Positions 919 through 46,800 of a stretch of 64,000 bases of DNA are shown here, piece by piece (positions within the stretch are counted from its first letter, which is position 1; each line of letters begins with the position of its first letter). Both the position numbers and the translations under genes were made by a program. This DNA comes from Podarcis erhardii (lineage: Eukaryota), in NCBI GenBank assembly GCA_964252035.1, contig OZ176213.1; one strand, given 5' to 3'. A model generated the notes under the pieces. That model had not been told where the DNA came from, searched no databases, and saw only the letters and a list, made by a program, of their open reading frames with translations.

Positions 919-3900
919 GTAATAGGCAGGTACTGGTACTTAAGCCCTTTGTGACAGAGCTGAATGGCATCTGCTGGGAAAGGGGGGGGGGTGTGCTTAT
1001 GTGCCATCCTCCTGCCATCCAGTTTAGGCCCAACTGGGCCAGACTGACAGTATCTCTAGGGCTGCTTTCATCAGTTTTCCCCATGCGTGGGTGAACTGCC
1101 CATGTCAGAGAGGGCTGAGCCCCAGAAAGGTATTTGGAGGGGCAGGAAAACGTGTCTTGCTCCCTCTATCCTTCCAGATACTCGTAGCTGCTGCTAGGGA
1201 GGTGAAGGATGTTGGTATTTAATGGCATCTGAGGGGTTTTCTGAACTAGAGGTCCTTGTGGGTGCTTGAGGCCCCAGCATTCTGGAGCAGTTTCTGGGGC
1301 CACCAAATACTGGCCAGGTTGCCTCACTGCTAGCAGCTCATAGGCCTTAGCTATTTCTTTGGCAGGATTGAAACTTTCTGAGCCTGTCTCTCTCTTCTGC
1401 CTATAGCTCCCGGAAGGTGCCATCCGTCTTCACTCGAGTCTGTGAAGTACAGCGTGAAGAAGACAAGGCTCAACGCCCTGAGCTGCCTTGTCCACTATTC
1501 AGGCAAGTCCATGGAAGGCTTCCCTGGTGCTGTCTCTAGGGCTGTCTCTGCACAACTTCCCTTCCACATGAACTAATAACTCATCCCAGTGTGGGAATGT
1601 TCAGGGATGCAGGAGAGGATATATTGTGTGATTATATCCTTATCCAACTTGTGTTAACAAGTTCCCAATATCAGCAGAGTAAAAACATTCCCCTTTATCT
1701 TAAGTTTGCAACGGTAGCGTCTGCTCAGGTTCTAGCGAAGGGAGAACTTTGCCTTTGTATCTGCTTCTGGGTTCCCTAGGAACATCTGACTTGCCCCTGC
1801 TGGTAACAGAAGACGAGATTTGGATACACATTCATTGTGATCTGGCAGAGCTCCTCTCATGCTTTTCTGATTGCTTTCAGGGGTGACCTGTTCAATTTCC
1901 CAAGTTCCCAGGAGGAGCAGGAGCCACCTGCAACCTGGCAAAGCCAGCGAAGGCTTGTGCCCCTGGGTTGTGGACCAGTCCAGGACTCTGGCTTGAGTGC
2001 TAAGCGGACAGTGGGTTGTGCGGAGGAGGGAGAGGACATGGAAGTTGAAACAGCAGGAACTCAGGAGCAAAAAGAACAGAGGCCCCCCCAAAATGCAGCT
2101 TCCGTTCTGGTGGCTGCAGGGAATGATGGAGCTCAAACGCCAGAATCTGGCACCAGCAGCAAGGGGACGCAGGCTGTGGCAGAATTCCTTCGAGGGCCAG
2201 CGGAATTCACGTCAGCAGCCACACAGACAGTGCCTACTGGCCAGGTGGAGGTGGGGACCAGCACGGCTGGGTTGTGGCCTGGACAGCAGGACACTAAAGT
2301 GCAGGTGGAAGAGGACCATGGATCTAGGCCTGCCAGGGCTGGACATGCGCCAGGGACCCAGCACAACCAGGTGAGAGGGAGTTGGATCATGTACTTGGAA
2401 AAGGGGGAGGGGGGAAAGATGTGCAGCTGCCTGTGGCAGGGGCAAAGGATTATCTCCTACCTCCTGGTCTCAGCTTTTAGAGTGGGAGGTGGCAGTTGCC
2501 ACATGTGCCTCCCCCAGACTTTCCAACTCTGAGCAAGGTGGGAAGAAGCAGCCTCATCAAGAGAAGCACTTTGATTGGTCAGCCCAAATGTGCCCAAAGG
2601 TCCACCAAGTCCCCCTCGCAGTAGTGATCAGCCAGGTGCTAGTGAGAAGCCCACAAGGGTGGCAATGGCTATCCCTGCCTCTGAACGTATTTCGTTTGTT
2701 TGTTTATATATAAATACAGTCAAACCTCTGTTATCGAACGTAATCTGTTCCGGAAGACCGTTCGGCTTCCGAAAATCATTCAAAAACCGGAGCAGTTACT
2801 TCTGGGTTTTCGGGAGCTGAGGTTTGGCTGTATGAGATTTATATTTAAATATATTTATAAACATTTATTTCATATGTCACGACATGCCATATAGGTGAAA
2901 ACTGCACAATTACAGTAAAAATGTCAAACAGATCAGGCAGAGCTGTCTGACAAAGAAATCTCAAACTATTGCCATTATAGGTGAATGGTTTCTGCAAGTG
3001 CATGTGATGACCCCGTCCTGTGACAGTGAATTTCAGGAGGGCATGATTGTCCAGATGCATTTTGGGGCATGTCCTGCATTTGCTGCCAGTTGCTTGTATT
3101 GGATAATTCTGGTGCTGCAGGAGGCCTCTCTTGTCACCAAGCCATTTTTAGTTGCCCTTTTATGTGCCATTTGCAGCTCTGTGAAAGCCGTTCCTGCCTC
3201 TAATAGCAAGCTCAGGTGGTGAGTGCTGATGGGATTGGAGCTAAGAAACAGTGGAGAGCTGCTGTTTCCTGTTAGTGTCCAGATGGTACTGAGCTGGATT
3301 GACCAGTGCTGTATAATTCTGTATAATGCAGTCTCCTGTTCCTCTGACAGTGATGTTCCCCTTTCATTCCAAACAGCAGTGTGCTGTGGAGGAATCTCTG
3401 AAAACTTTCTACCTTTTTCTTTTCTTCAGCACGAGGAAGGGTTTGATTTGCCTCGCCCACCCCCAGGCAGAGCCCTCCGGCGTCATATACGGACCATCCG
3501 CGAAGTACGAACTGTTGTCACACGACTCATCACAGACATCTACTACAAGGATGGGGCAGAAGTGGAACGCAAGGTAGTGGAGGTAAGGCGAGAGATGTCA
3601 AGGCCGGGACAGCTCAGAAAACTTTCTGCGTTTTTTAAAGAGAATTTTTCCTACTTTTCCCAACCAATAATTTTGCTGTTTTGGAGAACACTGAATAAGA
3701 CTCAAATAAAATGCTTTCTCCTTTGGATTAAATAAGACAAACCTGTTACTCAAAATGAGTTGTCAAACACCAGCAGTCGTCAGTTGGCCACCATAGAGGT
3801 ATTGCGAGCACTACCTACTCCTGTACAGGAGAATTCATCATTAAATCCCCACAAGTTCATTCCCGTAGCAGACAGGGCATGCTTGCCCTTGTTCCTTTGG

Positions 3901-6900
3901 GCTGCCAGATGGGTGTGTGGACCTCAGAAAGGGAAATCTCTGACCTTATCCCATGTGATCTTGGGACAGTCACTTGCCCGCTTGTTGTCTCTAGACCTCC
4001 ATCTCCTTTTCGTTGGTTTCCTAGGGCTTCTTGTGCTTTGCCAGTTGCTTCTCTGAGTTTGCCATATTGGTCCCCTACTTGATAATACACACTATATCAT
4101 ACGCATCCAGGCCATTTTGGAGCCACAAATCCTGCTCCGTATCTTGCACCTTTGAGTGTTGGACCTGTGAACCTTAAGGCACTGTGATCACAAATTACCT
4201 ATTTGGTGCTGGTTGTTGACGTGTGAGCATCTACTCTTGCGTTGTATTCTTTTTAAGACTTGCAGCAGAGTTTCTTTTACAGAGAATCTTTATTATTTAC
4301 AAAAAAATTACACCGGTCAAATAAAACAATATAATTCCTTCTCCTCTAGCCATCTGACCAGAGACTTAATTGCTGACTCATTTACAACTTTGTTCATTTA
4401 CACACTAACTGACCTTTATTGACCACATGCCCTTAATAAAGGCACCTGTTGCTGGGGAGATTTTTCTGTTGCCTAGCAACCTGTTCAAGACCAATTCTCA
4501 AGTTCTTTCTAGAATATTCCAGCAGCCCTCCTAACTTGAAATTCTGTCTTGAACACCTGGCAATTTTTTTCTGCTTTTACTCAGTAAGACCCAATTCCAT
4601 AGTCAGCATTTTAAATTTAAAGGCTTTGTAAAAATATATGCAATCATAAACCCTGTAGAACAATACCTAAGCTTGATCCATCCTTTTAAAATGCAATCTT
4701 TTACATGTGCATAGCATACATCTAAGAGTTTTGGTTTCGGTTTACATTTTTCTGTCTTTCCTGCAACTGGACTATACACTCCAGAGTTTCCTGCAAGACT
4801 CTTTCAAGATCAGACAGGCATTGTGTGGGGTGTTTTCACCATCAGCTTATTTCTCTGGGTTTTCTCTGGCTGCTAATACTGTTAAGGCAGGTTTTATTTT
4901 TAAATTGCTTCTTGAAAATTTAAAGGAGCTTTGGGGAGGTAGGGAACCTTGGAGTAGGTGAGCTTTTGTCAGGGTTTGCTTCTGCAGTTCAGCTCTGCTC
5001 TTTTGAGATGGGTGCTTGAAGTGCCTTCTCCAGCGAGAAGAACATCATTTTGCCTGTTCTGACCTTACAGGTAAGTATTTTATTTTGTTGAGCGGAGGAT
5101 AGTGGAATAAAATGCCTTGTGGCTAAAGGGTGCGGCACTTTCTCCCTCTTTCTCTGATAGAGCTGAGCATCAACAGGATGGATACCCAAAGAGTTTCCTG
5201 TTTAGAATGTCAGAAAGTAGCTCTGTTGTGGGAAGAGCACTGCTCTGGGAGCTTTGCCCTGCCCTACATGTATCTGGCTGAGAGGGACTTGCCTGTGGAT
5301 GGATCCCTCTTGGGATCTGAAAGCGCTGGTCCTAGGGCATCTCTCCCCTTGTACCTGGCACCTGGTGCCTTCCCTCCCTCCCTTGAATCCCAGTCTGCTT
5401 TTCTTTCAGGAGAGAGAGGACCCCATCATGGAGTGCCAGGAGAGTGAGGTGGACGTCTCCCCCTCTCGCACGGGAGGCTCTTCTTCGCTTGCCTCTGGAG
5501 ACCTTGGTGACATCAGCTCCTTCTCATCCAAGGCCTCTGGCCTCCAGCGCATGTCCAGTGGAGGGAGCAGTGCCTTGTCCGTCACACACAGTGGGACAAG
5601 TTCTGGGCAAGGAGGCACTCTTCTGAGAGGAGGGAGACCTTGCCAAGGAGCCGGGCCTGGAGACTTGGCCTTCCCAGGGGTCAGAAAGCTCAGGTGGGTG
5701 CAGGGCCTCTGGGAAAAGGACATCAGAGGAAGGCTTCACTTTGGGGGAACAGCAGGGTGGAAGAGAGAGAGGCCATTTTGCATTCTTTGGAGTTTTGTTT
5801 TAGGTGGGGCATGAATATGACTCTGTCAGTGTGTTGTTTAACCAGATTCCAAACTGAAAGCCTGTGCTATACTTTTAAAAGGCCATGGGTTCTAAAACGA
5901 ATTGAATTTATTCACAGTTGGCGAGTTAATATTTTTGATGTCAAGGTTTTAAATACTTGAAGGTTGGTGTTGTATTGAGTGATGTTTCAAACTGGGGGAA
6001 CAATGCGGCAAATCATGTTGGGTTGCCTTGTGAGCAGCTTTATTTGGGCTTTGCTGTTTACCTTGAAATGCGAGGAATAAATTCTTTGTGCCCACAGTTC
6101 TGTGCCATGACCCTGGGAGCATGTGTGGGGCCTCCAGGGCATTGTGGCTGGCAGGCAGGCTGGCTATGCAGAGGTTAACGCTGCCTTTGGTTTCCCTAGC
6201 CCTAGGAAGGGGGGCAGCCAGCCTCAGTCTCCAGTCCAGCCTGACCATGCAGCAGTTACTGGGGTGTGTGAGGAGGAAGCGCAAGGCATGATCAACCAGA
6301 GGAGTGGCAGAGCCCCTCCAACTCCTCGCAGACGAGGGCGAAGGGGCCGCCTCACATCGCGATCGGCTGGAGCCAGGTAGCGTGGTGAAGGTCAGCTGAT
6401 GCTGATGAGGGAGGTGACCCTCGTGGGGTGGAGTAGCAAGAGCTAAAGGCCCTTGCAGCTTCTCCAGCTGTTTCTCTCCCTGGATCTGCAGGGCCAGCCT
6501 GCCAGCTGTGGAGGATCTGTCAACCACAGCCTTGCCAGAAGAGGACTGCCACACGCATCGCCCTTTGAAGGGGCAGGACCGCAGCATCTCCCCTGAAATC
6601 CCCTTGCAAGAGCGTCTGGGGGTTTCTACCAGCACAGAGCTTTCCTCTGCCACCACCTCCTCTTCTGCAAACAGTTTTGTGGGCCTCCGGGTGGTGGCAA
6701 AGTGGTCCTCGAATGGCTACTTCTACTCTGGGACTATCACACAGGATGTAGGGGGTGTCAAATATAAGCTGCGCTTTGACGATGGCTATGAGTGTGATGT
6801 TCCAGGCAAAGACATCTTGCTGTGCGACCCTCTCCCCCTGGAAACAGAGGTGACGGCCCTTTCGGAGGACGAATACTTCAGCGCAGGTAACTCGTCTGGC

Positions 6901-9900
6901 TGGCGAGGGACCTGCAGTGTTTGGGGTGGGCGGTAGGGGGGAGTTGGGTCCCAGGCTGTGAGCTGCCCTTATGATGCCTTCTGCCTTGGCTGCAGGGGTA
7001 GTGAAGGGGCACCGGAAGGAGGCTGGGGAGCTGTTCTATTGCATTGAGAAGGAGGGCCAGCGGAAGTGGTACCGGCGGAGAGCAGTCATCTTGTCTTTAG
7101 AGCAAGGGAATCGGCTCCGAGAGCAATTTGGGTTGGGCCCCTACGAACCCGTCATGCCCCTGACAAAGGCGGCTGACATCAGCCTTGGTAAGCAGCCTGT
7201 AGGCAACTGCCCTGTGGGTCTGGCCGAGAGAAATGGGAACACCTAGGAACCTGTTAATTGAGGGCTGGAGCTGCAGGATGCTGGCCTTGGGTAAACTCTT
7301 CAGTTTTAAGAGGCGCAAGTGACTTCCTTCTGCTACCCTGCAGAAAACATGCAGAGGGGCCTTGGTGCTGCTGCGTGTTGAGGTGGGAGCTAACAACATT
7401 TTCCTTGTGGGGCTAGATAACCTGGTGGAAGGAAAGCGGAAAAGGCGCAACCTTGGCTCTCCCAGCACCTCCAACAACACAACACCCACCCGCAAGGGCC
7501 CTGAGAGCCCCCAGACCCCGCACAGGCTGTCTAGCAAGAGGAAGCTAGTTGCCTCAGAAGAGGAGAGATCCCCTGCCAAACGAGGGCGGCGGGCAACCCC
7601 TACAAAGCCAGGTCAGACTGTTTTATGTCTCCTTGTATTGCATCTCTTCTCCCTGGATCAGACTTTCCCTTCTTGGTCTCCTCCAGCCTTTCCTCCCAAA
7701 CCAGAGGAGCTGGAGCTGAGCTCTTGCACCAGGAGGATCAAGGCTCCCCTCCCTCTCCATGAGAGAAATTCTAAGTTGAGGCTGCTGACCTGCTGTCAGG
7801 AGGCAGCCACAGGACTTTGATTTTCCTCCCTCCCTCCACAGGGGCTGCCTGTTCCAGGGAAGCAGTGAGCCCATCTGTCAGTGGAGGGGACTTGGGAGAT
7901 ATCCCGGCACCAGATGACCGATGGGGGCCTATGCCCCACAACAAGACTCTCTTTCTGGGCTATGCCTTTCTCCTCACAATGGCAGACCCCACAGATAAAC
8001 TCTCCAGTTGCCAGGAGCCTGCAGTGAGCAGCGAAGAGGAAGGTGAGTGCTCCATTGCTCCAGGGAGGCTGTTGGGGGCAAGGGTGGCCCTCGTTGACTG
8101 AATCTGGTTAAGCCATTGCTCATTTAGGGTGGTGACAGAGAAGGCAGAACTAGGAAAGGGGGGCCCACCTAGTTCAGCATCTTGTTCACATGGGGGCTAA
8201 AGGAAGGCAGCTTGGCCAAGGATCCCTGGTAGGGATTCTGCTAGCTGTGGTTTCTGTCCTCTTTGCAGGATAGTGGTGTGCCTACAAGGGCTAAGGAAGT
8301 GGCAAGTTGTGGGGCTGCAAGAACTTGAATTCAACAAGCCAGTATCTTACTGCACTTTCCAAAGTTAGTTTATTGAGGGGATAGTTTAACCTGGGACTTG
8401 GTAAGACTGGCTGTATCCTTGCACCTTGCCAGCCAGTGTGCAAGCACATCACAGGAGGGCTGTTGGGCAATATGACAGTGTGAAATCTCTTGATGGCTAC
8501 TTGAGGAGCCGTGCCAGGTGGCAGTCATGCCTTCTGCTATTCCAGGTCCTAGAAGCCCCAAAGATAAGGAATTGCCAAGTGTGGGGCAGAACATGTTTGC
8601 CATCTTGTGGCCCTTTAAGAGAAATCAGTGATTTGGGAATGAGCTGCAGATCTCTCCTGCAACTTTCATGCTCTTTACAGCTACCATTTGGGGCTTGCTT
8701 TAGGGCTCAAAAAATAATTTCACTAACTTAACAGTCAATTTCTGAACATAGCTCCAAGTGTTGGTGCTTACCTTTTAAAACCCTTTGCAGCAAGGGGCTT
8801 GGATTTTTGAAGGACCACCACCTTCTGAACGAACCAGCCCAGGTACTGAGGTCATCACTGAAGGCTCTTCTCTGGGTTCCCCCTCCTTCTCTTAATTACA
8901 TGGGTGCTGTCTTGAAGGTTTTCTTGGCAATAGCACACCCCTTTGGGTCACTTTCCTCACCTGTTACTACTATCTCTTATGTCATCTTGGCACTAGGTGA
9001 AGACCTTTCTGCGTTTCTCTAGGCATCGCTAAATGTCTAAATAATCTGCTGTGCTGCACACACGTTCTTGTCAATTGTATTATTTTCTGTTGAGTATAAA
9101 AGCAGTTCTTAGAGCACATCACTGAACAGTGGAGAATAATTTTTAAAGTGAATAGCTGTTCCTAGTCAAGTTTAGTCTCTGAACTGAATTTCAATGCAGT
9201 TGTTTTAATGTTCTTTATTTAACAAAATTCATAGTTTACAAAGAAAGATCAAAATACTAACTTAAAAATTAACAGAAGCAAGCATTTAAAAAGAAGTCAA
9301 CATGCAGCTTTTAAAATAGAAATAAAATTTGAGATTTTGATTGTGTGGAAATGTTTCACAGTTCTCTTGCAAGGGAAGAGGTGTAGTGCTCTATTTATGC
9401 TAAAGAATTAACTCCGCTAACTTCATCCTGTTTTCTAGACTTCTTGGAGGTAACACCTTACAACAAACACTACATTGGACTGCAGCTGCAAGCTGGAGGT
9501 GGTTTCATCCTGGAGGACTTCAATGAAAGCCAGGTCAGGAGCCAGAGCTGGGGATACATGAAGTAGCATCACCTAGGTTGGCAGTGGAGATTTATTTAGA
9601 GAGGGTGTTGGTGCTTTGCTGCTGTTTTCCTTTTAATGATGAAATGGATGCTTTTCTGGGTGTGGTCCAAGGGAGGCAGGTGCGTGACGGGTGGCAGCTT
9701 CACCTGCACACAGGTTGTCAAATGGGAATTGCCAATTGTTCTCCTTTCAAGACCTGGGATGTGAAAAGGAGGTGCGTGGCCATGATGCTTCTTGGAATGG
9801 GACAGATCTTGATAGGAGCTGCTTGAAATAGAGGCAGAGAGAGCCTCTTTTCCTTCTATTGGCACATTTCTCAATTCTCTACTTCTGCCAGTACTCAGCC

Positions 9901-11007
9901 TTCCATTTTGCAGCTAGCCTGGCTGGCTAGTTGTCAAATAAGCATTTGACCACACCCGGTGTTTTATACTGAACCTGCAGCCTCTTCCAGGGCTTTGTGT
10001 TTGTATGGAAGCCCAGGTCTCAGCCTCCACTTCTTTTGTCCAGTGCAGTGCAGCCTACCAGTGCTTCCTGATAGCAGACAGACACTGCCGCAACCGGATT
10101 TACTTTCTGTGCCTTGCCCGAGGAATCCCCTGTGTGTCTCACGTCTGGGTCCATGACAGTTGTCATGCCAACCAGCTGCAGAACTACCGGAATTATCTGT
10201 TGCCAGCTGGTTATAGCCTGCAGGAGCAGAGGTTGCTGGACTGGTAAGTCCGTGAATGTTGGAGGGACCATGAGCAGCTTACCCACCTGGTGCAGGTGGA
10301 ACAGGGTGGCATGCTCAGTTCCTTTGCAGTGGAGCTGCCTCTAACTTTTGCTTCTTTCTAGGCACTCCCGTGAGAACCCTTTCAGTAAGCTGAAGGTGCT
10401 TCTGGTGTCCAGTGAGCAGCAGGACTTCCTGGAGCTCTGGTCTGAGATTCTTATGATGGGGGGCGCTGCTTCTGTTAAGCTGCAGGAATCTGCATCATGG
10501 AGCAAAGGTACAAGCCCTGGAAGCAGCCAGCTGGTTTCTGTGGCGGGTAGATTGGCAAGAGGCTCTCCGTTGCCCACTGAGACATACCAATCCCCCTGTG
10601 CAGAAAAGAAGCCTGCTTTAACTTCTCGATTCCTGAGGGTTGCTGAGAAGTTGGATGAGGCAGGGCAAGAATTGATTGGCTGCTTCTCCCTTCACCCCTT
10701 TCCTTGTGTGGAGCTGCCATCCATCCTTTTCCAAAGGCAGCAAGATCAAGTACCTGGTGCTGTGAACAAGTAGGAGGAAAGGTTTGACCACACAGGGCAA
10801 TTCTTGTTTTCTATTTCCACAGATGTGAGTCTGGCTGTGTTTGATGTCGTGGTGACTGATGCTTCGTGCCCAACAGCTTTCTTGAAATGTGCTGAAGCGC
10901 TACAGCTGCCAGTGGTTACCCAAGAGTGGGTGATCCAGTGCCTCATTGCGGGGAAGAAAGTTGGATTCAAACACCCAAAGTATCAGCTTGATTCTGTCCC
11001 CAGTTGA
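867..11007 (+). CDS. TP53BP1: TP53-binding protein 1, 3' part (14 exons in window; 5' exons lie upstream of the window)
   Basis: Phase-consistent exon chain encoding recognisable 53BP1 motifs: [14 protein letters not shown] oligomerisation domain, GAR, tandem Tudor ([13 protein letters not shown]), UDR ([20 protein letters not shown]), tandem BRCT; stop TGA 11005-11007. Confidence 0.97.
1407..1502 (+). CDS. TP53BP1: TP53BP1 in-window exon 2 (GC donor)
   Basis: ctatag/[31 protein letters not shown]/gcaagt; 96 nt, keeps frame only with the GC donor. Confidence 0.8.
1881..2370 (+). CDS. TP53BP1: TP53BP1 in-window exon 3 (LC8/DYNLL1-type motifs)
   Basis: [25 protein letters not shown]; tttcag/ and /gtgaga. 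Confidence 0.9.
2717..2830. mobile_element. Tc1/mariner (Tigger-like) MITE
   Basis: TA-flanked; TIRs CAGTCAAACCTC / GAGGTTTGGCTG (11 of 12 match). Confidence 0.75.
3430..3582 (+). CDS. TP53BP1: TP53BP1 exon: oligomerisation domain
   Basis: [44 protein letters not shown]; AG/GT, 153 nt. Confidence 0.95.
5410..5693 (+). CDS. TP53BP1: TP53BP1 exon
   Basis: [37 protein letters not shown]; AG/GT. Confidence 0.93.
6200..6376 (+). CDS. TP53BP1: TP53BP1 exon: GAR motif
   Basis: [17 protein letters not shown]; AG/GT, phase 2 to 2. Confidence 0.93.
6492..6886 (+). CDS. TP53BP1: TP53BP1 exon: first Tudor domain
   Basis: [39 protein letters not shown]. Confidence 0.97.
6996..7187 (+). CDS. TP53BP1: TP53BP1 exon: second Tudor and start of UDR
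   Basis: [44 protein letters not shown]. Confidence 0.97.
7417..7611 (+). CDS. TP53BP1: TP53BP1 exon: end of UDR and basic NLS region
   Basis: [23 protein letters not shown]; AG/GT. Confidence 0.95.
7842..8042 (+). CDS. TP53BP1: TP53BP1 exon: start of BRCT1
   Basis: [15 protein letters not shown]; AG/GT. Confidence 0.95.
9439..9533 (+). CDS. TP53BP1: TP53BP1 exon (BRCT1), not in ORF track
   Basis: [32 protein letters not shown]; ttctag/ and /gtcagg, 95 nt. Confidence 0.93.
10044..10243 (+). CDS. TP53BP1: TP53BP1 exon (BRCT1 and linker)
   Basis: [44 protein letters not shown]; AG/GT. Confidence 0.97.
10362..10507 (+). CDS. TP53BP1: TP53BP1 exon (BRCT2)
   Basis: [32 protein letters not shown]. 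Confidence 0.96.
10823..11007 (+). CDS. TP53BP1: TP53BP1 last coding exon
   Basis: [26 protein letters not shown]; TGA stop. Confidence 0.96.
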
Positions 11008-12246: not shown

Positions 12247-15200
12247 CTGTAGAGAAAGAAGGGGCAGTTAATTAGAGGAAGGGCTGTGTGGCTGCAGCAG
12301 GGAGAAGGGTTGTGTAAATTGGGCACAGTAGCCAAAACTGCATGATGTTAGAGATGCACACACAACCAATTTCATATTATTTACAGACCACAGTGTGCAA
12401 AGTTTGAATTGCATTTTTTAACACTGCACACAGCTGGTTATAAATACATTTATATCCCACCTTCTAGGTCCCAAAACAGAAACAGCGGAAAGTCTAGATT
12501 ATGCCTAATCATCACATCCCTCTCACCAACAGCTCTCAAATAGGCTTAAGACCTTGTGTGTTTCTGGTTAGTAACAGGCCTGTGTAATTAAAGATTCCCA
12601 GTCCTTGGGAAACCTTAAGCCCTAGAAGGCAAGGAAACCCAGGCTAAGGATGGCTGTAGACGAGTCCACATTCAGGCAGAGCCCCCCACCTCCCACCACC
12701 AGCAGGAATATAACTAAAGGGGCTTGTGTGGTTTCCTGGCACTTGCCAAGGCCTACCTGCCCAAGGTGCCTCCAGCCTGGGTATAGTATTTGTTGTAGTC
12801 AAGACGTAACAGCAACTGAGCCAAGTCTGAATTGATCTGGTGATTGTGAACGCTGGAGAGGATCTTGAAAAGGAGTGAAGACTGACAGCTGAAGCCCTGC
12901 AAAGGTAAACGGCACCCATGAGCCATAAATTGAGAGCTCTGCCTTAGCAGAAAGGGCTGAACAGAGAGGACTAGAAGGCCACTCGAACCCATATGGGGAG
13001 GAAGCATCCCAGGCAGCTGCCCCACCTCATCGCTCACCCTTTGGGAACTGCTGTCCTGGAGGAGGAAAGGCCTCAGCTGTTGCTGCCAGTATGCCACAAG
13101 GGCCTGACCAAGGCTGTTTCTGATGAGCTTCATGGAAGAGCAATGGCCAGACTTCTTGTGTTCCTACCCCCACCCCATGCTGAATTCATCAGAGAGCTGC
13201 CTGCTCTGAGTTTTCAACATGCTTCCACAGGAGAGATGCCCCAAAAGCTTTGGGCGATGTTTTTCAGGTAGAAAAGTGCAAGGCGCACCTTGGCCAGGAT
13301 GCTCAACTGGGCTGTCCCCCGCTCATCCAATGGTCCCCGGTTCTGGCTGACAAGTGAGCAGAAGCTATGGCATAGATCCAGTATTTCATTCAGACAGTGG
13401 AAAGCCTGCAAAACCAAAGAGCAGAAAGGAGATGGAGGGCCTCACCAGAGCAGAAGCTTCTCGTCTTGCCCTTCCGCAGCCTGAGATAATGACAAGATTC
13501 AGCAGGATTATTGGATTGGTTTACTCAAACTATTTCACTTCTTGCTTAGTAGAGCAATTCTTAAGGTCTAATGGAGCTGATGCAAACAATCAAAACAAAA
13601 CAAAAATCTTCATACACTGCACAGCAGCTACCAAAGCCCGAAATTTCTGTTCAAGCATCATAAGCTGCTCTAAACATGAGTTTCCAAGACCAGTGAACAT
13701 TGATAGGCTTCTCCAGATTGCCAAATGCTACCAAGTCACCAGGAAGACACTCCCCCCAAAAAACACATGATGAAGGCAAACTGACACAGTTGCAGTTCAT
13801 TTATTTTCTATCCTGCTTTTCTATACAGACCTGTACCTCATCATTCACTTTAGCAGGTAAGGGCTTTGGTTGTGCTCATGGCCAAGCAACACAGCCATGT
13901 TCACAAGGGTCTGGCTTTTGCTTTAGTTCCTTCTTGCCGTGTTTGCATTGAAGTGAGCTAGGAGTGCTGTACTGGATGGGCATTTGGACTGTTCGAACAG
14001 GACCAGTTCTTCTCCTGGGGACACAAGGCAAACAAACTATGGGGATCACTCACTGGTTTCAGCAGAATGAAGGACTGTGCTAGGAGATTGCTCAAGAAGT
14101 GATCATGTGCCAGTCGAATGCTCTCAAAGTCACGGGTGGAGTTGATCTGCTGCAGAAGTTGGGAGAACTGAGACTCCAGAACATCCACCTGAGGATACGG
14201 AAAAGTGAGGGAGAAGATACTGCCTGCTGTTTCCAGTCATTTCCAGCCACCAATTTTTGGTGGGAAATTTAGGGTATCGCTGGGAGAACTGGCTGGTGCA
14301 TATCCCCTGGAGGAGTAGCACTGAAGCCTCAGAGTTAGCCCCTGAGACCTGTGTTGCTGCTCACCTGCAGGTAGTACTGCAGATTGTCTACAAGGAAAGT
14401 CATGTGATGGCGCAGTTGCCACTTGATGGCATCTGTCCTGTTGGATTCCAGGCGCTTGCACCACATCTGTAGAGCCCAGCAGTGCTGCAGTTCAGCCTGG
14501 ACTCGACGCACACTTAGCAGGTACTTGAAGACCACGTTGTACCTGCAAGCCAAGAGGAAGGCAAGCAAAAGATAGCTGGGTCAGACCAGGCCAGCCATCT
14601 CCTCCTCCCACCCAGGAAATGTGTGCTCTGCTACAATCAACCTCTGACACCAAAATGCCACAGAATCCACCTGGAAACAGAAACAGGGATAAAGCGGCCC
14701 TCACTTTTCCAGGACGGCAGGAGTAAAGAGGATATGCAGGGGCCACTGCACTCTGTAGGAGAGCCCCAGAGCAGCCCAGCCTGATGCGGGGGATTCATGG
14801 GGAGACAGTTCCCGAGAAGGCGTATCTCGAGCTTGAGCGGCATCTGAAAAGGAAGGCAGGTGGGCAACAATACGGCTGCAATCCTTGCTGGACCCCACCC
14901 TCCTTCCCTGCCACCCTCCTTCCCTGCCACCCTCCTTCTCATTTTATCAATGGGCAGCCAATGCAGATGAGAGACTTGCTCCAGGCCAGCCAGGGGGTTG
15001 ATGAGACTGGCCTTGGCTTTGAACTCCCAGCTTCCCAGACCTAGGGCTGCCATTTTGCCTCTGTGGAACCAAATTGGCTTTGTGGCTCTGTGCTTATAGT
15101 TGTGGTGGGGCCTAAACCTGCCCTGCTCAGGGCTGCTTGGCTCCCTGGCACCAGCACCCACCTCGGTGCTCCTTTCCATAATAGTGGATGGTCAGGTGAA

Positions 15201-43834: not shown

Positions 43835-46800
43835 AGTCACTGGGCAAAGAGGCTGAGGGTCACCTCTGCTTATGCCCTGTGGGATGCTGTTCAGCTGTTG
43901 AAACCCAAGGTGGTGGACAATGTTCTCAAAGGAGTTTGTCTTGGCTAGGGCTAGGCGATATATTGTTCAAAACTGGTTTGAAGTCCATATCATGATATTA
44001 TATTGTTTTCATAGTTTTTGACCTGGATTCAATATGTTGTGAGAGTGTGTGTGTGTGTGTGTGTTATGCAAAAATCACAACATGGGAAAAACTGTGAAGC
44101 CAGCCAGTGCATCTATATATCTCCATCCGTATTTCAGACATTGTGATATATCAGAATATTAAGATGTTTAGCTGATGGTATATCACAAAGTTGAAAACCA
44201 GATATTACCCAGCCCTACTGTTCGCCTCTACATAGTTTCATCTTTATTTCAGACATCATTATATATTGGTATATCACAATCTTTAACTGGTGATATATCA
44301 CAATGTTGAAAACCAGATATCAGCCAGCCTTAGCCTTGGTGCCTGCCAGCTTGATTCTTGGCCATCTTTACCTATAACAGGTAGCTGGAGGGGACCACTT
44401 GGCTGGCAGGCCCAAGAGACCATTATTAATGGAGGTGCCTCCTTGTGTGAACCGGCAGTGGCAGGTGACTGACCAAGGAAGCCTCTGCAGGGGGGAGAGT
44501 TCCTTTCTGGGCCAGGTGCTCAAGCAGGTGCATTGTCTGTGTGCAGGTCCAAGTGGGGTCAGGAATGCAGTTCCACAGCCCTTCCCCACCACAGTTGATC
44601 TTATTAATTCCTTATGAGCCATCCTTGGCAGTTATTTGTTGAAAGGCAGGCATGCAATCAAGCGTAAAAAATAAAAAACTAGAACTGGGTGGTCTCTTTC
44701 CCAACTCACGTCCTTTCCCCCCAAACCTCCTGCTTGTAGGTGGATGGAGGCCTGCCTCAGTGAAGAGCTGCCCCCCACAACGGAGCTGGAGGAGGGGCTC
44801 AGGAATGGGGTCTACCTGGCCAAACTTGGAAACTTTTTCTCCCCCAAAGTGGTGTCTCTCAAGAAGATCTACGACCGGGAACAGACCAGGTATAAGGTAG
44901 GCAAGCATTTTTCTTCTGTAATGAAGCATCTCGCGGGGGCAGAAATAAGCAGTCGGCCCAACTGCAGCTGCTGGAAAGCCCAGAGCAGGATATATGAGAA
45001 GATGTGTTACAGTTGGTGTGCCCCGATTTTTATTTCGTTTTCTGAGAATTGGTGCATGGCTTTTCACTAGCAATAAGAAAGTATGTGAATAGTCTCAGTT
45101 TCGTTTGTTGATCACAGAAAGTCTTCCTTAGATGAGAGCATGGGATGCTTTCTGAAGGCCCTTGCAGCTACGGTGAGGCTCAGGCGGCAGCTTTTGCACA
45201 GAAATGTGTCAACACAACTCCCACCCCCACCCCAAATCCCTGGCTTCTGGGGTGAAGGGAGCTGATCCACCTGAACACAGTCTTCCTGTGTGCATGATGC
45301 TTCTTCGTTGTTTTATTTATTTACTTATTTTATTACCTGCCCTTCACCCTAAGGTCAGGTTACAATACTAAAACACAATACTGAAAGCAGTTTTAAAGAA
45401 ACTTACAATGCACCTTCCTTCACATCTCCCGCTTCTTCCTCTGCGTTTCAGGCTACAGGCCTCCACTTCCGGCATACAGACAACGTGATTCAGTGGCTGA
45501 ATGCAATGGCAGAGATTGGCCTCCCCAAGGTAACTTTGCTTGGACTGGAAACAGTCTTTGAAGGTTGGGGAGGGGGGTGGCAGAAGAATTAGGCACATGG
45601 GAACCAAGGCTGGAGCACTCCAAACCACTTTACCTCTTCACTCCAGGTTCTTGGCATAGTCGTCATCTTTCTCCCTCCTGCCAACTCTTCCTTGGGGTGC
45701 TGCAGAGTGCCCCCTCTCTTCTCCCTGTTCCCCCCTCCCCACAAAAGAACTGAGCTTGTGGGCACAGTGGAGGAGTGAGCTTTGGGGAAACGGTTGCTCT
45801 GTTTTGCTCTGCCAAGCATGTGGAGGACTCAGTGGGCCTCTTTTTCTTTGCATTCAGATTTTTTACCCAGAAACAACAGACATCTATGACCGGAAGAACA
45901 TGCCACGCTGCATCTACTGCATTCACGCACTCAGGTAATCACACAGGTGCAGGTGAGGCGATCCAACAGATGATGTTTTGAGGCTGGAAGAAACATCCTT
46001 GCCCACCCCTTTCTCTCTGTCTCTTAGAAAGGTAACCAGCATCAGCAGTCTGCTTCCCAGCAGAATCAGTCAGTTCTCACTTTCCTTGCTTTGTTGGCAA
46101 GGAAATGCATACTGCCTACTTAAACCCCATCTGGGCTTACATTATGTTTGTTGATTCTATCAAAAATTAAGCCACGCACCCATAGTTCCTGCCTGGAAAA
46201 CTGAACATGCTAACGCTAACAAGGCTATACAGTATTAGTTTCTAGGGTGGCCAGAAAAGAAATTAAACTTTTCCTGCCTCGGTCCTGAATCAGTTGTGCT
46301 AACATCAGCATGGATAGGTGATTAATCCTGCCCCCTGCAGAACGATTCCCCCCCCCTCCGTTTCTGTCATGGTGAGAAGCTATTCCCTGGAATTTAGGGA
46401 GTCTCTCTGCTTCTAATTTGCCCTGTTCTGACAGGGGGAGATCTTCTATGTGCAGAAGACTTAAGGGCAAGAGGCAACTTGAATCTAAAAGTCACAAGAG
46501 GAAGAGATCTGACAAATTTCCTTCGAACAGCATTTCTGTGTCTTCTCCTTTAATCTCCCCCAGGAGTTTTTATTATTATTATTTTATTATTTATTGAATT
46601 TGTATACCGCCCTTCATCTGAAGATCTCAGGAGGTTCACAGCATAAAAGCAGTACAAAAACTCAAAATGCATAATAAAAGCAAGAGAAAGAACAAACCAA
46701 CTCCCCCCCCCCACCTGATCGTCCTTTATTTTTCCTCAGTTTGTACCTGTTCAAGTTGGGATTGGCCCCGCAGATTCAAGACCTGTATGGCAAAGTGGAC

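What the first reader, a model, noticed from the sequence alone, without database searches (positions are those of the whole stretch)
7142..7187. Loss of the mitotic off-switch phosphosite T1609 in the 53BP1 UDR
Seen: [16 protein letters not shown], with ATG (7154-7156) where human has V-T1609-P; the S1618 equivalent and the rest of the UDR are unchanged. Established: mitotic phosphorylation of T1609 (proline-directed) and S1618 (PLK1) blocks H2AK15ub reading and keeps 53BP1 off mitotic chromatin, preventing telomere fusions. Inference: one arm of this switch is missing. ACG>ATG would be a single CpG transition, so it could be a young or heterozygous allele.
Basis: partly seen in the sequence, partly recalled or inferred. 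Interest (0 to 1): 0.7.

Follow-up and report, generated by a model that had tools for sequence, protein, structure and literature searches.

The report
Lacertid 53BP1 lacks T1609 phosphosite
The DNA-repair protein 53BP1 of this lizard really has methionine where humans have the mitotic phosphorylation site T1609, but this is an old change fixed across the wall-lizard family and repeated in skinks, a frog group and several fishes, so it looks like a tolerated loss of a back-up site and not a fresh mutation.

Summary
Window 7154-7156 is ATG, in the TP53BP1 exon 6996-7187 that encodes the end of the tandem Tudor domain and the start of the UDR. Human and mouse chains have Val-Thr-Pro there.

It is not an assembly error or a young allele:
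- An independent assembly of a relative about 3% diverged has the same ATG.
- A spliced transcript contig from another related organism matches the exon exactly.
- The annotated proteins of Podarcis muralis, P. raffonei, P. lilfordi, Lacerta agilis and Zootoca vivipara all have Met.

The amphisbaenian Rhineura, the nearest outgroup sampled, keeps Thr. So do geckos, iguanians, anguimorphs, snakes, a cordylid, turtles, crocodilians, over 100 birds, mammals, frogs and a newt.

The site was lost independently elsewhere: skinks (Met, Ala), a frog-like group (ACG to ATG) and several teleosts (Ala, Pro, Val). The S1618 equivalent is Ser in 327 of 327 aligned proteins. The Tudor and UDR exons show 13 synonymous and 0 non-synonymous differences between two lacertids.

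Best reading: a fixed loss, at least tribe-wide in Lacertidae, of the auxiliary proline-directed site. Mitotic exclusion is probably carried by S1618 and other controls, which is untested. Interest is modest.

The parts
7154..7156 (+). ATG codon (Met) at the position of human 53BP1 T1609; the following CCC (Pro1610 equivalent) is kept
   Evidence: same codon in L001 and in a spliced contig of organism G
6996..7187 (+). TP53BP1 exon: C-terminal part of the tandem Tudor domain plus the first part of the UDR (through ...ADISL and the first base of the Asp codon)
   Evidence: Pfam PF09038; PDB alignment; splice joints 6886>6996 (loose ends) and 7187>7417 in RNA-like contigs
7181..7183 (+). AGC codon, Ser at the position of human S1618 (PLK1 site), conserved
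   Evidence: Ser in 327 of 327 aligned orthologues and fragments
7417..7611 (+). Next TP53BP1 exon: rest of the UDR ([11 protein letters not shown], identical to human) and the Ser/Thr-Pro-rich linker with the NLS
6492..6886 (+). TP53BP1 exon with the first Tudor repeat (methyl-lysine cage residues kept)
7842..8042 (+). TP53BP1 exon holding the equivalent of the Cdk1 site S1678 (AVSPS, kept) and the start of BRCT1
   Evidence: Benada 2015 for S1678
1411..11004 (+). 3' part of the TP53BP1 gene as far as it lies in the window. Exons by tblastn with Podarcis proteins (HSP bounds, approximate where not refined by splice joints): 1411-1503, 1876-2370, 3427-3594, 5401-5693, 6200-6376, 6492-6886, 6996-7187, 7417-7611, 7842-8042, 9439-~9533, ~10014-10256, 10363-10515, 10798-11004.
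   Evidence: tblastn; joints; BRCT Pfam hits

Best explanation
The window carries the 3' part of the TP53BP1 orthologue of a lacertid lizard very close to Podarcis. In the stem of at least the Lacertini, after the split from amphisbaenians, the Thr codon at the human T1609 position became ATG, most simply by a CpG transition ACG>ATG, and was fixed. This removes the only proline-directed (CDK1/p38-type) phosphosite inside the UDR. The rest of the H2AK15ub/H4K20me2 reader is intact and under purifying selection, including the PLK1 site S1618. Most likely mechanism (inferred): lacertid 53BP1 is still kept off mitotic chromatin by phosphorylation of the S1618 equivalent, by the retained S1678-type Cdk1 site, and by controls upstream of 53BP1. 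The T1609 arm is then an auxiliary, evolutionarily dispensable reinforcement whose loss is nearly neutral.
For: Shown:
- Sequence and alignment to human and mouse chains.
- Same ATG in an independent contig 96.8% identical to the window, with synonymous differences in the two codons just before it.
- A spliced transcript-like contig of organism G identical over the exon, and the same splice joint in organism H.
- Met in P. muralis, P. raffonei, P. lilfordi, Lacerta agilis and Zootoca vivipara.
- Thr in Rhineura (same clade Lacertibaenia) and in all other sampled squamate families except skinks, and in turtles, crocodilians, birds, mammals and amphibians.
- Purifying selection: 13 synonymous and 0 non-synonymous differences in the Tudor+UDR exons between the window and L001.
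- Independent losses: Tiliqua Met, Lerista Ala, a Lerista-like fragment Ala, a frog-like cluster Met with ACG in its relative, and teleosts Ala/Pro/Val.
- S1618 equivalent invariant, 327 of 327.

From the literature:
- S1618D alone lowers ubiquitin binding and foci, and T1609D only adds to it.
- T1609 is a minor Cdk1 site in vitro compared with S1678.
- RNF8 T198, another part of the switch, is itself not conserved (PMC4613155).
- The double mutant T1609A/S1618A still forms foci, so the Thr side chain is not needed for recruitment (PMC4270212).
Against: - No functional data exist for any lacertid.
- No single-site T1609A phenotype could be read here; Lee 2014 and Orthwein 2014 are not held.
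- Thr-Pro is otherwise strongly conserved over about 450 My, which argues that the site is not free of constraint.
- Lacertids, unlike skinks and turtles, have no substitute Ser/Thr-Pro inside the UDR.
- Lacertids also carry changes in the BRCT phosphate pocket, which could mean a non-neutral, coordinated change.
- Gallotiinae, Eremiadini, Teiidae and Gymnophthalmidae were not sampled, so the age of the change is only bounded.
Confidence: 0.7

Rival explanations
1. Adaptive or coordinated rewiring. Lacertids changed how 53BP1 is regulated by phosphorylation: loss of the CDK site in the UDR together with loss of phosphate-pocket residues in BRCT1. The result would be a real change in mitotic exclusion, in G1 re-recruitment by PP4, or in gamma-H2AX binding.
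For: Lacertids read RNRI/RNRM where nearly all other vertebrates read RTRK in BRCT1. Rhineura already has Leu at the Lys position. Lacertids have no compensating Ser/Thr-Pro in the UDR. Both changes are fixed and the protein is under purifying selection.
Against: The two changes did not arise together: the Lys is already lost in Rhineura, which keeps Thr. Skinks, the frog-like group and teleosts lost the Thr without the BRCT change (Tiliqua and Lerista read RTRK). No test of positive selection was possible, and no functional data exist.
Confidence: 0.15
2. The T1609 arm operates as a mitotic switch only in mammals. Elsewhere the Thr is conserved for another reason, such as local structure next to the conserved Pro, so nothing regulatory was lost in lacertids.
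For: All functional work found concerns human cells. Pro1610 stays conserved (322 of 327) even where Thr is replaced. Another element of the switch, RNF8 T198, is not conserved.
Against: A Thr-Pro kept from ray-finned fishes to mammals is the minimal consensus of proline-directed mitotic kinases. Replacements include chemically unrelated residues (Met, Ala, Pro, Val), which speaks against a strict structural role for the side chain.
Confidence: 0.12
3. Assembly or sequencing error, or a young or heterozygous allele of the sequenced individual.
For: A single C>T at a former CpG is the commonest kind of point change. Only contigs, not raw reads, could be laid.
Against: The same codon occurs in independent assemblies of several other organisms and in five annotated species of three genera.
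Confidence: 0.01

Closest known systems
Human 53BP1 UDR mitotic switch (pT1609 by CDK1/p38, pS1618 by PLK1; reversed by PP4C/PP4R3beta)
   Same: Same gene and same motif. The Tudor cage, the UDR core [14 protein letters not shown], the S1618 equivalent, the S1678-type SP site and the BRCT pair are all present.
   Different: The Thr of the Thr-Pro site is Met, so the proline-directed arm cannot exist. The alanine two residues upstream is Pro, as in other sauropsids.
Engineered human 53BP1 T1609A/S1618A (TASA) and T1609D/E-S1618D/E mutants
   Same: The lacertid protein is a natural equivalent of a non-phosphorylatable change at position 1609.
   Different: Only one of the two sites is changed, and to Met rather than Ala. 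The papers read here describe S1618D single and double mutants; no T1609-only non-phosphorylatable mutant was found.
Parallel natural losses of the same site in skinks (Tiliqua Met, Lerista Ala), a frog-like group (Met) and teleosts (Scophthalmus Ala, Brachyhypopomus and Periophthalmus Pro, others Val)
   Same: Same position, with Pro1610 and S1618 kept. In the frog-like pair the change is the same ACG>ATG.
   Different: These are independent events in unrelated clades. Skinks (like turtles) have a Ser-Pro six residues upstream (GLSPYEP) that lacertids lack, and they keep the BRCT RTRK motif.
RNF8 T198 (CDK1 site that blocks RNF8-MDC1 binding in mitosis)
   Same: Another phosphosite of the same mitotic off-switch that is reported not to be evolutionarily conserved (PMC4613155).
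   Different: A different protein; not in this window and not examined here.

Membership tests
TP53BP1 orthologue | Tandem Tudor domain of the 53BP1 type | tested here: met
   PF09038 E=1.5e-23 on the exon peptide; 87% identity to human and mouse PDB chains; cage residues present in the spliced translation
TP53BP1 orthologue | UDR core directly after the Tudor domain (…[15 protein letters not shown]) | tested here: met
   Spliced reading across 7187>7417; identical to human chain 4cri and the Podarcis proteins
TP53BP1 orthologue | C-terminal BRCT pair | tested here: met
   PF18428 (30.1 bits, above cut-off) and PF16589 (below cut-off) on exon ORFs; E=1.7e-39 to human 53BP1 BRCT chains 1gzh/1kzy/5ecg
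TP53BP1 orthologue | Best full-length relatives are annotated TP53BP1 of related species | tested here: met
   376-382 of 386 residues identical to three Podarcis TP53BP1 proteins; colinear tblastn over 13 exons
Two-site mitotic UDR phospho-switch as described in human | Thr/Ser-Pro at the T1609 position | tested here: not met
   Met-Pro in the window and all six lacertids
Two-site mitotic UDR phospho-switch as described in human | Ser at the S1618 position in the D-I-S-L context (PLK1 site) | tested here: met
   AGC at 7181-7183; invariant in 327 of 327 proteins
Two-site mitotic UDR phospho-switch as described in human | Actual mitotic phosphorylation of the sites and exclusion from mitotic chromatin | not testable with these tools
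   Needs phosphoproteomics or imaging in lacertid cells

The most novel reading that the evidence does not exclude
Lacertid lizards are a natural 'T1609-dead' 53BP1 lineage in which the CDK arm of the mitotic off-switch and the BRCT phosphate pocket were both given up. On this reading 53BP1 regulation in this family relies on PLK1/S1618 alone or on a different, still unknown mechanism, with measurable consequences for mitotic break handling and telomere protection.
Probability: 0.12. Interest if true: 0.55.

Novelty: new variant of a known kind. Interest (0 to 1): 0.3.

Why it matters
The T1609/S1618 pair is usually treated as one unit, because almost all experiments mutate both sites. The comparative pattern separates them. 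S1618 is invariant, while T1609 has been lost at least six or seven times in vertebrates and has stayed lost in a whole lizard family whose reader domain is under purifying selection. This is natural evidence that the proline-directed site is auxiliary. It also gives ready-made sequences (lacertid, skink, turbot) for testing whether S1618 alone is enough for mitotic exclusion. For genome annotation the result is simply that the gene is intact and the codon is correct.

Tried and rejected
- Assembly error or a young allele: rejected.
- Pseudogene or relaxed constraint: rejected for the Tudor/UDR part, with 13 synonymous and 0 non-synonymous differences, an intact frame and spliced transcripts in two organisms.
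- Identifying the run accessions of the unnamed fragments through the paper library found nothing. The frog-like and skink-like fragments are therefore named only by their nearest annotated relative.
- A search for T1609M in papers found nothing.
- Lee et al. 2014 (PMC4030556) is not held, so single-site data from that paper could not be read.
- The first word search with the exon peptide saw only exon-sized fragments. I therefore used the one big representative search to reach full-length proteins, because the claim of a lineage-specific loss rests on what relatives carry.
- Organism names of the sequencing runs are coded, so organisms A-H cannot be named.
- For organism B the table of differences was truncated, so 'no difference at 7155' is likely but not proven.
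- The contigs behind the mammal-type fragments were deliberately not fetched.

Full report
**1. Observation**

Window 7142-7189 (+) translates to [16 protein letters not shown], and the Met codon ATG lies at 7154-7156. The 63-residue exon peptide (window 6998-7186) aligns end to end with PDB chains of mouse (1ssf) and human (4cri, 5zcj) 53BP1, E about 1e-32. Those chains read ...[19 protein letters not shown]. The window therefore has Pro for Ala and Met for Thr1609, with the Ser1618 equivalent unchanged. Pfam assigns the peptide to 53-BP1_Tudor (PF09038).

The exon is 6996-7187. It is joined to 7417 (GT..AG) in spliced contigs of two other organisms. The spliced reading continues [11 protein letters not shown], identical to human, and then into the linker and BRCT region. 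The frame is intact and an SP site of the S1678 type is retained. tblastn with Podarcis proteins lays 13 colinear exons between 1411 and 11004.

**2. Is it an error or a young allele? No.**

- The word search with the exon peptide found an identical fragment (P0001) on a Logan contig of another run (L001). That contig is 96.8% identical to window 5910-7424 (45 mismatches), so it comes from a different but related organism. It carries ATG, with synonymous differences in the two codons just before it.
- The run finder listed the probable source (organism A), five organisms at roughly 1.3% divergence, and two with small, transcriptome-like contig sets.
- Laid on window 5500-9499, the source-run contig shows 0 differences.
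- Organism G has a spliced contig identical to the window over 6992-7186 and joined to 7417.
- Organism H shows the same joint, and no difference is listed at the codon.
- Organism B differs at 49 places, none of them listed at 7154-7156, but that table was truncated.
- Only contigs were available, so heterozygosity within the sequenced individual was not measured.

**3. Which lineage?**

Earlier notes of this scan call the genome a lizard. An exon-sized query cannot reach full-length relatives in the word search, and the claim depends on what relatives carry. I therefore used the single representative search, then two word searches with full-length proteins and cluster look-ups, which give organism names.

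- The window's exon is 63/63 identical to Podarcis.
- Over 386 spliced residues the window differs from P. raffonei, P. lilfordi and P. muralis at 4, 8 and 10 positions. It differs from Lacerta agilis and Zootoca vivipara at 23 and 22 positions.
- The window is therefore a lacertid very close to, or within, Podarcis, but it is none of these three species.
- All five annotated lacertids have Met (Lacerta reads EPFMPL).
- Rhineura floridana, an amphisbaenian in the same clade Lacertibaenia, has Thr.

Thr is also present in:
- the cordylid Hemicordylus, plus Elgaria and Varanus;
- four iguanians, seven geckos and four snakes;
- turtles, crocodilians and more than 100 bird species;
- platypus and other mammals;
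- Xenopus, Spea, Hyperolius and Lissotriton;
- Polypterus and Megalops.

The change therefore arose on the lacertid stem after the split from amphisbaenians and before the Podarcis/Lacerta/Zootoca radiation. Gallotiinae, Eremiadini and teiioids were not sampled.

**4. Constraint**

Between the window and L001, the Tudor and UDR exons (6492-7187) carry 13 synonymous and 0 non-synonymous differences. The four non-synonymous differences all lie in the disordered segment 6200-6376, and non-coding divergence is 3.5%. The Met-bearing reader module is thus under purifying selection and is transcribed and spliced.

**5. The site elsewhere**

The position is not invariant.

- Skinks: Tiliqua scincoides has Met, Lerista edwardsae Ala, and a Lerista-like fragment Ala.
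- A cluster of three fragments has Met. Its nearest named relative is the frog Hyperolius (57/63).
- Teleosts: turbot has Ala, Brachyhypopomus and Periophthalmus have Pro, and others have Val or Ser.

Over 327 aligned proteins and fragments (isoforms included, so these are not species counts), position 1609 has Thr 283, Met 27, Pro 8, Ala 4, Ser 3 and Val 2. Pro1610 is kept in 322. The S1618 equivalent is Ser in all 327.

Skinks and turtles have a Ser-Pro six residues upstream (GLSPYEP). Lacertids have no Ser/Thr-Pro anywhere between the Tudor helix and KRKRR.

**6. What is known**

- In human cells T1609 and S1618 are phosphorylated in mitosis. This blocks binding to H2AK15ub nucleosomes, and PP4C/PP4R3beta reverses it in G1 (PMC6751209; PMC4270212; PMC9778356; PMC4317954).
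- Benada et al. (PMC4613155) report that S1618D alone reduces recruitment and that T1609D adds to the effect.
- They also report that, in the C-terminal fragment, Cdk1 phosphorylates mainly S1678, and T1609 only slightly.
- They further note that RNF8 T198, another element of the switch, is not evolutionarily conserved.
- The double Ala mutant still forms foci, so the Thr side chain is not needed for recruitment.
- I found no paper on natural variation at T1609 and none on T1609M. Lee 2014 is not held.

**7. Interpretation**

Shown:
- A real, fixed, family-level Thr>Met replacement in lacertid 53BP1 removes the proline-directed phosphosite.
- The rest of the module is intact and constrained.
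- The same site has been lost repeatedly in other vertebrates.
- S1618 never varies.

Inferred:
- The T1609 arm is auxiliary, and its loss is tolerated because S1618/PLK1, S1678/Cdk1 and upstream controls suffice.
- The mutational route was ACG>ATG.

A minority reading is that lacertids rewired 53BP1 phospho-regulation. They also read RNRI/RNRM where other vertebrates read RTRK in the BRCT1 phosphate pocket. However, Rhineura already lacks the Lys while keeping Thr1609, and skinks lost Thr1609 while keeping RTRK, so the two changes are not coupled.

**8. Verdict**

The Met is already present in public lacertid protein models. The comparative pattern (variable T1609, invariant S1618) appears not to have been described in the papers searched. 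It is a natural variant of a known regulatory motif, of modest interest mainly as a ready-made test of single-site sufficiency.

**Housekeeping**

- No N runs occur in the window.
- No contig was taken for human, and the contigs of mammal-type fragments were not fetched.

Noticed in passing
window 10086-10109 (BRCT1 exon, about 10014-10256): BRCT1 reads [11 protein letters not shown] where human chains read CRTRKYFLCLA (Thr>Asn, Lys>Ile at the residues another note calls T1812/K1814). Podarcis has RNRI and Lacerta/Zootoca RNRM. Rhineura has RTRL and Hemicordylus CNRK. Skinks, geckos, snakes, iguanians, turtles, frogs, birds, crocodilians and mammals have RTRK (Gekko has RTQK). The Lys loss is therefore shared by lacertids and the amphisbaenian, and the Asn is lacertid-wide.
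   Followed up: partly
proteins P0189, P0123, P0058 (skinks) and turtle proteins such as P0242: Skinks that lost the Thr have Ser-Pro six residues upstream (GLSPYEP), a possible substitute proline-directed site. Turtles have both sites. Lacertids have GLGPYEP and no Ser/Thr-Pro in the UDR.
   Followed up: partly
L006 versus L007/L008 (fragments P0012/P0051/P0052 versus P0013): A frog-like group (nearest named relative Hyperolius) shows an independent ACG>ATG change at the same codon. Three distinct Met sequences exist, so it is probably fixed there too. The organisms are unnamed.
   Followed up: partly
window 6377-6491: A 115-nt intron upstream of the first Tudor exon is spliced out in organism H's contig but is continuous in a contig of organism G (6198-6869). 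This is either a retained intron or pre-mRNA. Retention would shift the frame.
   Followed up: no
window 7528: Organisms G and H carry an extra GCA (one codon) in the Ser/Thr-rich linker after the UDR, relative to the window.
   Followed up: no
window 13961-14236 (-) and 44675-45067 (+): By eye, stop-free stretches downstream of TP53BP1 look like a gamma-tubulin complex component (TUBGCP4-like, minus strand) and a calponin-homology domain of the IQGAP type. Neither was tested with any tool here.
   Followed up: no
proteins P0095, P0098, P0115 and fragments P0014, P0079, P0088, P0091, P0108: Several teleosts lack the Thr: Ala in Scophthalmus maximus, Pro in Brachyhypopomus gauderio and Periophthalmus magnuspinnatus, and Val/Pro/Ala in unnamed fish-like fragments. 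All keep the DISL serine.
   Followed up: partly
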